Assembly (NCBI GenBank): GCA_033442325.1
Contig: JAWQFM010000013.1
Span: forward strand, 110,202-168,421
DNA: 58,220 bases
Source: Salpingoeca rosetta
Lineage: Eukaryota > Protista > Choanoflagellata
Direction: 5' to 3'
Made by a program: the position numbers and the translations under genes. Below, piece after piece: positions 6,003-7,156 of this stretch. The notes below the pieces were generated by a model that was given only the letters and a program-made list of their open reading frames with translations, was not told where the DNA came from and did not search any database. Every line of letters starts with the position of its first letter. Within the stretch, counting starts at the first letter, position 1.

Positions 6003-7156
6003 GTGTGCGTGTGTGTGCGTGTGTGGGGGGGGGGGGGGGGGTGTGTGTGTATGTGTGTGTGGGTGTGTGTGGGTGTGGGTGTGGGTGTGGGTGTGGGTGT
6101 GTGTATGTGTGTGTGGGTGTGTGTGGGTGTGGGTGTGTGTCGATGTACGCGTGCATGCCCAAGCGGATGTTGTTTGTGCCTGTGGTACTTTCGATCCGTA
6201 CGTTCTTCCATGCCCTCTTGTAAGCTCATCCCCGCCCCCTTCTGCACCCGACCTGTGCTGTGGTGCATTGTGGCGTGTTTGTACAGAGTGCCGTCGTTGG
6301 AAAGAAGCCCAAGCTGTTCTACCTGCCACCAGAAGAGTACTCAGGATCGAACGGTGTGAAGCGCTTCGTCTTTGACGCGTCACAGGTCCCCTGGGACGTG
6401 GAGTGCCCCATCTACAAGCCCGTCGAGTACACGCACCCGTCTGTGGCGGCGCAGCCCGTGTGGGCGGACCCTGCCGACCCGCGCAAGATCAAGTTCAATG
6501 TGAAGGACGAGGTGAACGGCAAGGTGGTTGATCGCACGTCGTGCCACCCAAGCGGCATCAGCATCGACAGCAACACCGGTCGCCCCATCAACCCGTGGGG
6601 ACGCACGGGCATGACAGGCCGCGGCCTGCTGGGCAAGTGGGGCGTGAACCAGGCAGCGGACACGGTGGTGACGCGGTGGAAGCGATCATCAGACGGCAGC
6701 ATCCTGGAGCGCGACGGCAAGAAGGTGCTGGAGTTTGTGGCCATTCAGCGCATGGACAACAAGATGTGGGCCATCCCAGGTGGCTTTGTCGACAACGGGG
6801 AGGACCGTGCGACGGCAAGCGGGCGCGAGTTCATGGAGGAGGCCCTCGGCACCAAAGACAAGCGTGGTGCGCTGAGCAAGGACGAGGAGGAGTCTGTGGC
6901 TTCCCTCTTTGCCGATGGTGCCGTGGTTGGCCGCATCTACAGCGAGGATCCGCGCAACACGGACAACGCGTGGGTGGAGACGACGTGCGTCAACTTCCAC
7001 GATGAGAGCGGGCGCCACGCCGCAAGGCTCAAGCTCCAGGGCGGCGACGATGCCGAGCACGCGCGCTGGATGATGGTGCACGGCGGCCTTAACCTGTTCG
7101 CCTCACACCGCACCCTCCTGCGCATGGTTGCCAGCTACCACACCGCCTACTACTGA
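158..7156 (+). CDS. TRPM2: TRPM2-like channel-enzyme, paralog A (5' part upstream of the window); MHR3/4 - S1-S6 - TRP helix - coiled coil - NUDT9-homology domain
   Basis: 16 in-window GT-AG exons splice in frame (158-262, 409-516, 725-1177, 1404-1579, 1728-1845, 2009-2116, 2378-2437, 2650-2789, 3084-3228, 3522-3650, 3827-3989, 4210-4385, 4747-4822, 5049-5117, 5470-5942, 6287-7156; 3369 nt = 1122 aa + stop). Motifs: LEELRQ (S2) and WNRLD (S3) Ca2+-site residues, LGPKLIM S4-S5 linker, filter [13 protein letters not shown]6 NILLVNLLIAMFNDTY, Nudix box [36 protein letters not shown]. Colinear with the downstream paralog. Confidence 0.93.
4520..4625. repeat. 28-bp intronic minisatellite, ~4 copies
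   Basis: Unit ctgtctacctgcctgtgtgtctgtctgt repeated in tandem. Confidence 0.85.

What the first reader, a model, noticed from the sequence alone, without database searches (positions are those of the whole stretch)
6419..7121. Patchwork gene conversion homogenises the enzyme domain of the two TRPM2 paralogs but spares the Nudix-helix region
Seen (aligned by eye): A 6419-6805 vs B 21251-21637 differ at about 7 of 387 nt, and A 6943-7121 vs B 21775-21953 at about 3 of 179 nt, including synonymous sites, while the intervening 6806-6942 is strongly diverged ([48 protein letters not shown] vs [48 protein letters not shown]) and introns do not align. Inference: recent ectopic gene conversion with a protected island around the catalytic helix, suggesting selection for paralog-specific kinetics or channel coupling.
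Basis: partly seen in the sequence, partly recalled or inferred. Interest (0 to 1): 0.75.

Follow-up and report, generated by a model that had tools for sequence, protein, structure and literature searches.

The report
Four-gene conversion mosaic in srTRPM2 enzyme exon
The enzyme-coding last exon of the choanoflagellate channel-enzyme srTRPM2 and three sister genes has been repeatedly copy-pasted between genes in short patches; the one stretch left different between the two copies in this window encodes the groove where neighbouring subunits clip together, though whether selection keeps it different is unproven.

Summary
Copy A 6419-6805 differs from copy B 21251-21637 at 7 of 387 nt, and A 6943-7121 from B at 3 of 179 nt. 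The 137 nt between them differ at 58 positions, and introns do not align.

Copy B is the published Salpingoeca rosetta srTRPM2 chanzyme (PDB 8SR7). The contig is choanoflagellate, not human.

Gene conversion is strongly supported:
- Synonymous difference (pS) is 0.02-0.10 inside the tracts, against about 0.45-0.7 elsewhere.
- A permutation test for clustering gives P=0.0002.
- Segment trees disagree with each other.

The two-paralog picture is incomplete. Four genes share a mosaic NUDT9-H exon:
- Three are tandem TRPM2 genes on contig C13.
- The fourth, on contig C36, is a SLOG / non-TRPM-pore / NUDT9-H chimera.

The "island" is composite:
- An A-only patch, where B=C=D are identical.
- A B-only patch, where A, C and D are nearly identical.
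- A core of about 60-75 nt that is diverged in every pair.

The island maps onto the Nudix helix, a loop, the next helix and a strand (srTRPM2 residues 1379-1424). Published work shows this is the docking cleft of the buckle helix that controls tetramerisation, kcat and gating.

Selection protecting it is plausible but not shown. Independent tract ends at a fast-evolving segment explain it equally well. This is a new instance of a known process and of moderate interest.

The parts
6287..7156 (+). Last exon of TRPM2 paralog A (end of the linker plus the whole NUDT9-H domain, stop codon included)
   Evidence: The open frame carries a Pfam NUDIX domain and matches PDB 8SR7 residues 1215-1494 at E=8e-160. 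The acceptor is read from the sequence.
21116..21988 (+). Last exon of paralog B, the published srTRPM2 (F2UB89 / XP_004993318), from residue A1205 to the stop
   Evidence: B's residues equal PDB 8SR7 residues 1215-1494 (chain sequence, B translation). The splice junction lies inside the buckle helix.
6419..6805 (+). A-B conversion tract 1 (partner B 21251-21637). Sub-part 6419-6629 is also shared with D (about 7% different). Sub-part 6630-6805 is near-identical in all four paralogs.
   Evidence: 7 mismatches in 387 nt. pS is 0.02 and 0.07. Permutation P=0.0002.
6806..6829 (+). A-unique patch (residues 1379-1382: R, T, A in A versus V, L, T in B, C and D). B, C and D are identical here at the nucleotide level.
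   Evidence: A differs from B, C and D at 9 of 24 nt; B, C and D differ from each other at 0 of 24; A differs from outgroup O at 3 of 24. The segment tree groups (A,O) at 91%.
6830..6865 (+). B-unique patch as seen from A: Nudix helix C-terminal half and start of the loop. A, C and D are nearly identical here.
   Evidence: A-D 1 of 36, C-D 1 of 36, A-C 2 of 36; B differs from the others at 13-15 of 36. There are 13 consecutive 'B-only' sites.
6866..6941 (+). Core diverged in every pair: loop, second helix (residues about 1403-1412) and strand (1417-1424) of the buckle-helix cleft
   Evidence: All six pairs differ at 17-36 of 76 nt. A-B pS/pN is 0.58/0.43. Secondary structure comes from the AF2 model.
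6942..7121 (+). A-B conversion tract 2 (partner B 21774-21953). 6942-7023 is also shared with D; 7024-7121 is A=B only.
   Evidence: 3 mismatches in 179-180 nt. A-D differ at 0 of 82 in 6942-7023. Permutation-significant.
21638..21774 (+). B side of the un-homogenised segment (srTRPM2 residues 1379-1424). 21611-21663 is identical to C; the rest occurs nowhere else in the assembly.
   Evidence: (best other loci are 74-76% identical).
1458..1565 (+). Extra A-B near-identity tract in a channel-body exon (partner B 16551-16658)
   Evidence: 2 mismatches in 108 nt.
3541..3603 (+). Extra A-B near-identity tract (partner B 18712-18774)
   Evidence: 1 mismatch in 63 nt.
3832..3934 (+). Extra A-B near-identity tract in a transmembrane-region exon (partner B 19061-19163). 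C is diverged here.
   Evidence: About 1-2 mismatches in about 100 nt. The whole exon has 10 in 164 and pS 0.18, against background around 0.5.

Best explanation
The NUDT9-H (last) exon of four S. rosetta channel-enzyme genes is a mosaic built by repeated short-tract interlocus gene conversion, with tracts of about 50-400 nt.

The four genes are:
- The tandem TRPM2 paralogs C, A and B on contig C13, where B is srTRPM2.
- The SLOG / non-TRPM-pore / NUDT9-H chimera D on contig C36.

A and B exchanged two tracts recently (about 1.8% divergence). The tracts are anchored on the two most conserved parts of the enzyme core. Other events linked A/B with D, linked B with C and D, and linked A with C and D.

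The 137-nt A-B 'island' is what is left where none of the A-B tracts reached. It combines an A-native patch, a B-native patch and a fast-evolving core. It encodes the Nudix helix, a loop, a second helix and a strand. Together these form the cleft that receives the buckle helix of the neighbouring subunit.

Shown: the tracts, their statistics, the four-way mosaic and the structural mapping.

Inferred: the recombination mechanism (non-allelic homologous repair), and the reason tracts stop there. The reason could be a divergence barrier to heteroduplex formation, purifying selection against convertants that alter buckle-cleft docking, or both.
For: - Mismatch counts and run structure.
- Per-segment pS/pN: 0.02-0.10 in the tracts, against 0.45-0.8 in unconverted segments. 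Correct-frame gene-body blocks give 0.44-0.68.
- In the same segments the non-participating copy C has pS 0.54-0.56, so codon-level constraint cannot explain the identity.
- Permutation test: the best concordant fragment gives P=0.0002 for A-B, A-D, B-D and C-D; a second A-B fragment (6989-7121) also passes the 99th-percentile threshold.
- Segment trees switch topology: (A,B,D) at 84-86%, (A,B) at 93%, (A,O) versus (B,C,D) at 91%.
- Only exons align.
- D's SLOG exons are saturated against A, B and C (pS 0.65-0.69, 38-59% amino-acid identity). Its pore exon is only distantly TRP-like. Yet its NUDT9-H exon is 0 of 82 and 14 of 211 nt from A.
- No fifth locus carries B's island.
- Extra A-B tracts occur in three body exons.
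- Structural mapping: AF2 model H164-176, H188-197, E202-209 equals residues 1379-1424; buckle-helix cleft and cross-link residues G1384, A1410, S1414 come from PMC11479946.
Against: - No read-level or second-assembly check was possible. The published srTRPM2 constructs were synthesised from this annotation, so they are not independent.
- Direction and number of events are unresolved.
- Segment trees rest on 24-211 nt, and some nodes have low support.
- The GC3 excess in tract participants is suggestive only, because the outgroup has similar GC3.
Confidence: 0.85

Rival explanations
1. The un-homogenised core is actively protected. Convertants that import a foreign buckle-helix cleft lose proper NUDT9-H tetramerisation, and hence kcat control and gating, and are removed by selection. 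Each paralog therefore keeps its own cleft and its own buckle helix.
For: - The island coincides with the cleft.
- The buckle-helix linker, upstream of tract 1, is also left diverged between A and B.
- Buckle docking changes kcat (2.96 versus 5.4-7.2) and produces long closed states when it is removed.
- The core is diverged in all six pairs.
- C-A divergence in the converted 6419-6629 region (25%) is no lower than in the island (24%), so a simple divergence barrier is not obviously sufficient.
Against: - pN/pS in the core is about 0.74, not above 1.
- A, C and D have similar clefts but unrelated linkers.
- Two of the three cross-link positions (G1384, A1410) are identical in all four genes.
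- The Nudix-helix part of the island is homogenised in other pairs.
- This helix-loop region has no consensus across the NUDT9 family generally.
Confidence: 0.3
2. The island is a neutral by-product. Independent tracts nucleate on two highly conserved anchors (6630-6805 and 6942-7023) and stop where B's native sequence is about 40% diverged, because heteroduplex is rejected there. No selection on the island is needed.
For: - The anchors are conserved even against another species: pN 0.06-0.10, and 12-25 differences in 82-176 nt.
- The segments that are not converted (6302-6418, the island, the tail) are those with pN 0.36-0.50.
- The loop has the lowest model confidence and no family consensus.
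- Short tracts with varied ends occur in other exons too.
Against: - Tract 1 extends 210 nt leftward through a region where C is 25% diverged.
- Both tracts have the same divergence (1.8% and 1.7%), which would also fit a single discontinuous event.
Confidence: 0.5
3. The identity tracts are an assembly or polishing artefact, with consensus mixed between paralogs.
For: The assembly has gaps nearby: N runs appear. No reads were available.
Against: - The tracts still carry 10 copy-specific differences.
- The mosaic involves a copy on another contig.
- The A-only patch matches an independent metagenomic relative.
- Similar tracts occur in three other exons.
- Mis-polishing acts only where copies are already near-identical.
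Confidence: 0.04
4. The tracts reflect purifying selection or codon bias on an essential enzyme core, without any sequence exchange.
For: The tracts cover the most conserved protein segments, and GC3 there is high.
Against: - Copy C keeps the same protein core but has pS 0.54-0.56 against A and B in the same codons.
- The outgroup has pS 0.35-0.54 there.
- Segment topologies conflict with each other.
Confidence: 0.02

Closest known systems
srTRPM2 chanzyme (UniProt F2UB89, NCBI XP_004993318; PDB 8SR7-8SRK; Huang et al. 2024, PMC11479946; Iordanov et al. 2019, PMC6461439)
   Same: Copy B's last exon encodes residues 1205-1494 of this protein and is identical over 1215-1494. Copy A keeps the Nudix box (REFMEE), E1386, E1390, D1460, W1264 and R1347, and its exons are collinear with B's.
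   Different: A differs from B in the buckle-helix linker, in the first 35 residues of NUDT9-H, in residues 1379-1424 and in the last 11 residues. A has never been characterised. The papers I read treat srTRPM2 as a single gene.
Interlocus gene conversion and concerted evolution in tandem gene families (from general knowledge: fetal globins, red/green opsins, RHD/RHCE, CYP21A2/A1P)
   Same: Short near-identical tracts that include silent sites, lie inside otherwise diverged paralogs, have mosaic boundaries and leave introns diverged.
   Different: Here the exchange is concentrated on one domain-encoding exon. It includes a partner on another contig whose channel body belongs to a different TRP clade.
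S. rosetta TRPM/TRPW expansion, including PTSG_11274 (SLOG + NUDIX on a TRPW-clade pore), in bioRxiv 10.64898/2026.06.15.732245 / PMC13663828
   Same: That work reports eight TRPMs, five of them with a C-terminal NUDIX domain, plus one TRPW-clade protein with SLOG and NUDIX. Gene D matches that architecture.
   Different: The preprint (the version read here) has no occurrence of 'gene conversion' or 'tandem'. I did not verify that D is PTSG_11274.

Membership tests
Interlocus (ectopic) gene conversion between paralogs | Near-identical tracts, silent sites included, embedded in diverged coding sequence | tested here: met
   pS is 0.02-0.10 in the tracts, against 0.45-0.8 in neighbouring segments and 0.44-0.68 in correct-frame body exons.
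Interlocus (ectopic) gene conversion between paralogs | Non-random clustering of concordant polymorphic sites (Sawyer/GENECONV logic) | tested here: met
   With 291 polymorphic sites and 5000 permutations, P=0.0002 for the best A-B, A-D, B-D and C-D fragments, and a second A-B fragment also passes the threshold. This was my own implementation, not the GENECONV program.
Interlocus (ectopic) gene conversion between paralogs | Phylogenetic incongruence between adjacent segments | tested here: met
   Site patterns switch between B-only, C-only, A-only, B-only and C-only. Segment ML trees change topology with 84-93% support at the key nodes.
Interlocus (ectopic) gene conversion between paralogs | Not explained by recent whole-gene duplication (introns and flanks diverged) | tested here: met
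   only exon blocks align; identity about 20-45% just outside the exon.
Interlocus (ectopic) gene conversion between paralogs | Tracts are real in the organism's DNA (read-level or independent-assembly support) | not testable with these tools
   No reads were available. The protein search found no independent copy of A. Published constructs were synthesised from the annotation.
Interlocus (ectopic) gene conversion between paralogs | GC-biased signature in converted tracts | tested here: inconclusive
   GC3 is 0.85-0.94 in tract participants and 0.73-0.76 in non-participants of the same segment, but the outgroup is also at 0.87-0.91.
TRPM2-type chanzyme (copy A) | C-terminal NUDT9-H domain with a canonical Nudix box and catalytic residues | tested here: met
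   REFMEE, E1386, E1390 and D1460 equivalents are present in A, B, C and D.
TRPM2-type chanzyme (copy A) | TRPM channel body collinear with srTRPM2 | tested here: met
   Thirteen or more exon blocks are collinear with B, with open frames and 59-86% amino-acid identity. This was done exon by exon; the 5' end lies outside the window and is partly masked.
TRPM2-type chanzyme (copy A) | ADPR-gated current and ADPRase activity | not testable with these tools
   These have been published only for B (PMC6461439, PMC11479946).
Selection-maintained conversion cold spot | Evidence of diversifying or paralog-specific selection in the spared segment | tested here: inconclusive
   Core pN/pS is about 0.74, which is raised but below 1. 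The mapping to the buckle cleft is suggestive. A, C and D share similar clefts but have unlike linkers.

The most novel reading that the evidence does not exclude
The enzyme core of all NUDT9-H-bearing channel genes in S. rosetta is kept uniform by conversion. The buckle helix and its docking cleft (residues 1379-1424) are held paralog-specific by selection. They would then act as an assembly code that sets which subunits can clip their enzyme domains together, and so sets each channel's ADPR-hydrolysis rate and open time.
Probability: 0.2. Interest if true: 0.65.

Novelty: new member of a known kind. Interest (0 to 1): 0.4.

Why it matters
srTRPM2 is the structural model for how a channel and its own ligand-destroying enzyme are coupled. 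This work bears on that model in four ways:

- Its enzyme exon is a recent mosaic shared with three sister genes, so phylogenies and "ancestral" inferences built on that domain mix several histories.
- The sister genes offer natural chimeras with the same catalytic core but different buckle-helix and cleft sequences. These are ready-made tests of the published buckle-helix model of kcat and gating control.
- A gene with a different pore family keeps exchanging its NUDT9-H exon with TRPM2 genes.
- The mechanism itself, interlocus gene conversion, is ordinary.

Tried and rejected
- A first blastn/tblastx run without masking drowned in (GT)n microsatellite hits and timed out. I redid it with DUST/SEG and colinear chaining.
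- tblastx picked the wrong frame for the near-identical exon 3832-3990, giving pS 0 with pN above 0. I corrected this by scoring all three frames.
- I looked for an independent copy of A's exon among 5.8 billion proteins. None was found. The best hit was a 72%-identical marine-metagenome relative, which I used as the outgroup.
- I looked for a hidden donor of B's island in the assembly. There is none.
- I tried to infer the direction of conversion from branch lengths. The result was not robust, so I left direction unresolved.
- I considered codon-bias or purifying-selection-only and recent-duplication explanations. Both are rejected on copy C's synonymous divergence in the same codons and on the unalignable introns.
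- I built no joined spliced coding sequence or protein and searched with none. All searches were exon by exon, by reference.
- I made no full-length A-versus-B protein comparison and no search for full-length relatives.

Full report
**What the window is**

The sequence is GC-rich and intron-bearing, and it is full of (GT)n microsatellites. The last exon of the downstream copy (B, 21116-21988) is identical over residues 1215-1494 to the TRPM2 chanzyme of Salpingoeca rosetta in PDB 8SR7 (chain sequence, B translation). The window is contig C13:110202-168421 of a 55.4-Mb, 68-contig assembly. It is a choanoflagellate contig, not a human one. All searches on the spliced genes were done exon by exon, by reference. 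I built no joined coding sequence or protein, and searched with none.

**The observation**

| A segment | Mismatches vs B |
|---|---|
| 6419-6805 | 7 of 387 |
| 6806-6942 | 58 of 137 |
| 6943-7121 | 3 of 179 |

- Outside the tracts the exon is about 55-65% identical.
- The introns align only through microsatellites.
- Both quoted peptides are correct.

**Is it conversion?**

The evidence says yes.

- Nei-Gojobori synonymous differences (pS) between A and B are 0.02, 0.07, 0.06 and 0.10 in the tract segments. They are 0.70, 0.58 and 0.57 in the exon start, island core and tail, and 0.44-0.68 in correctly framed body exons.
- The third tandem copy C keeps the same protein core, but in the very same codons it has pS 0.54-0.56 against A and B. 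Codon-level constraint therefore cannot explain the identity.
- A Sawyer-type permutation over 291 polymorphic sites gives P=0.0002 for the best concordant fragment of A-B, A-D, B-D and C-D. A second A-B fragment (6989-7121) also passes the 99th-percentile threshold.
- Segment ML trees change topology: (A,B,D) at 84-86%, (A,B) at 93%, and (A,outgroup) against (B,C,D) at 91%.

**Four genes, not two**

A six-frame search of the assembly with B's NUDT9-H found four close copies:

| Copy | Location | Identity to B |
|---|---|---|
| B | this window | 100% |
| A | this window | 83% |
| D | C36:582644-583477, minus strand | 79% |
| C | C13:104416-105246, just upstream of the window | 77% |

More distant copies exist, including E on contig C4 at 56%.

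- C, A and B form a head-to-tail row.
- D has a TRPM-type SLOG exon (Pfam LSDAT_euk, E=1e-12).
- D's 799-residue pore exon is only distantly TRP-like (Ion_trans; best PDB hits are TRPV4 at E=3e-11 and srTRPM2 at E=9e-9).
- D's SLOG exons are saturated against A, B and C (pS 0.65-0.69, 38-59% amino-acid identity).
- D fits the SLOG+NUDIX member of the TRPW clade mentioned in a 2026 preprint. I did not verify that identity.

**The mosaic (A coordinates)**

| Segment | Pattern |
|---|---|
| 6302-6418 | B is the outlier |
| 6419-6629 | A=B (1 of 211); D close (14-15 of 211); C far (53-54) |
| 6630-6805 | All four within 6-10 of 176 (pS 0.07-0.15, against 0.34-0.37 to the outgroup) |
| 6806-6829 | A unique (9 of 24); B=C=D identical |
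| 6830-6865 | B unique (13-15 of 36); A, C and D within 1-2 |
| 6866-6941 | Every pair diverged (17-36 of 76) |
| 6942-7023 | A=B=D (0-1 of 82); C at 12-13 |
| 7024-7121 | A=B only (2 of 98) |
| 7122-7153 | All four different |

- The A-unique patch is only 3 of 24 nt from a 72%-identical relative recovered from marine metagenomes. It therefore looks ancestral, and the B=C=D form looks like a variant spread by conversion.
- No other locus in the assembly carries B's island.
- A and B also share short near-identical tracts in three channel-body exons: A 1458-1565, 3541-3603 and 3832-3934. The patchwork is thus not confined to the enzyme domain.

**What the "island" encodes**

With residue = 1215 + (B nt - 21146)/3, the island is srTRPM2 residues 1379-1424.

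- An AlphaFold2 model of B's domain (pLDDT 95) places these elements there: helix 1379-1391 (the Nudix helix), a loop, helix 1403-1412 and strand 1417-1424.
- Huang et al. [quoted passage not shown]
- The buckle helix tetramerises the enzyme layer, lowers kcat (2.96 versus 7.16 for the isolated domain), and prevents long closed states.
- Their cross-link mutants pair N1201, A1203, A1205 and V1206 with G1384, A1410 and S1414. All three cleft residues lie in the island.
- The buckle helix spans the penultimate/last exon junction and is also strongly diverged between A and B.
- The catalytic and ADPR-binding residues named in that paper (W1264, R1347, E1386, E1390, D1460) are conserved in all four copies.

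Protection by selection, however, is not shown.

Points against protection:
- The island is composite, and its Nudix-helix part is homogenised in other pairs.
- Core pN/pS is about 0.74, below 1.
- G1384 and A1410 are invariant among the four copies.
- A, C and D have similar clefts but unrelated linkers.
- This helix-loop region lacks any consensus across the NUDT9 family.

A neutral reading fits about as well. In it, tracts nucleate on two cross-species-conserved anchors (6630-6805 and 6942-7023) and stop where B's native sequence is about 40% diverged.

One point favours protection. Tract 1 extends through a region where C is as diverged (25%) as A-C are in the island (24%).

**Other rivals**

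- An assembly or polishing artefact is unlikely: there are copy-specific differences inside the tracts, a partner on another contig, an outgroup-like A patch, and tracts in other exons. It cannot be excluded without reads.
- The published constructs were synthesised from the annotated protein, so they are not independent evidence.
- Direction and number of events remain unresolved.
- The higher GC3 in tract participants is compatible with biased conversion but is not decisive.

**Novelty**

- Papers on srTRPM2 that I read treat it as one gene and do not mention paralogs or conversion.
- The 2026 TRP survey reports the TRPM/TRPW expansion but has no occurrence of 'gene conversion' or 'tandem'.
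- The process is well known. This is a new and rather clean instance of it, with a useful link to a solved structure.

Noticed in passing
G000:C36:582000-591999 (L018; gene D, minus strand): This gene has a TRPM-type SLOG exon and a single 799-residue pore exon that is only distantly TRP-like (best PDB hits TRPV4). Its NUDT9-H last exon is 0 of 82 and 14 of 211 nt from A in two segments. It is probably the SLOG+NUDIX TRPW-clade protein of the 2026 preprint. Its exon structure differs from the TRPM2 genes.
   Followed up: partly
window 1458-1565, 3541-3603, 3832-3934 (partners 16551-16658, 18712-18774, 19061-19163): Short A-B near-identity tracts (1-2 mismatches in 63-108 nt) sit in channel-body exons whose neighbours have pS of about 0.5. 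Conversion is therefore not limited to the enzyme exon.
   Followed up: partly
window 7909-10812, minus strand: An uninterrupted 967-codon ORF lies between genes A and B on the opposite strand, with no Pfam match at E<=0.01.
   Followed up: partly
L015:417-1283 (ENA ERZ27287911; also L016, L017 from Tara/marine metagenomes): A 288-residue NUDT9-H ORF is 72% identical to A. It probably comes from an uncultured relative of S. rosetta. It shares A's 'DRAT' form of the Nudix-box spacer.
   Followed up: partly
window 7160-7300, 22000-22100, and most introns (e.g. 5940-6200): Long (GT)n/(GTGTGC)n microsatellites fill the introns and 3'UTRs of all the paralogs. They create spurious long ORFs (CVCV/HTHT peptides) and spurious inter-copy BLAST hits.
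   Followed up: no
G000:C13:109140-110201 (the 1062 nt just before the window), also C13:92195-92997 and 95185-95284: These are runs of N. The first hides part of gene A's 5' region, either withheld or an assembly gap, so A's intactness at the 5' end could not be checked here.
   Followed up: no
window 6752-6754 / 21584-21586: Inside the segment that is near-identical in all four copies, one codon (residue 1361) differs completely: ATG (M) in A and D, CAA (Q) in B, AAG (K) in C. It is an isolated variable residue within a homogenised block.
   Followed up: no
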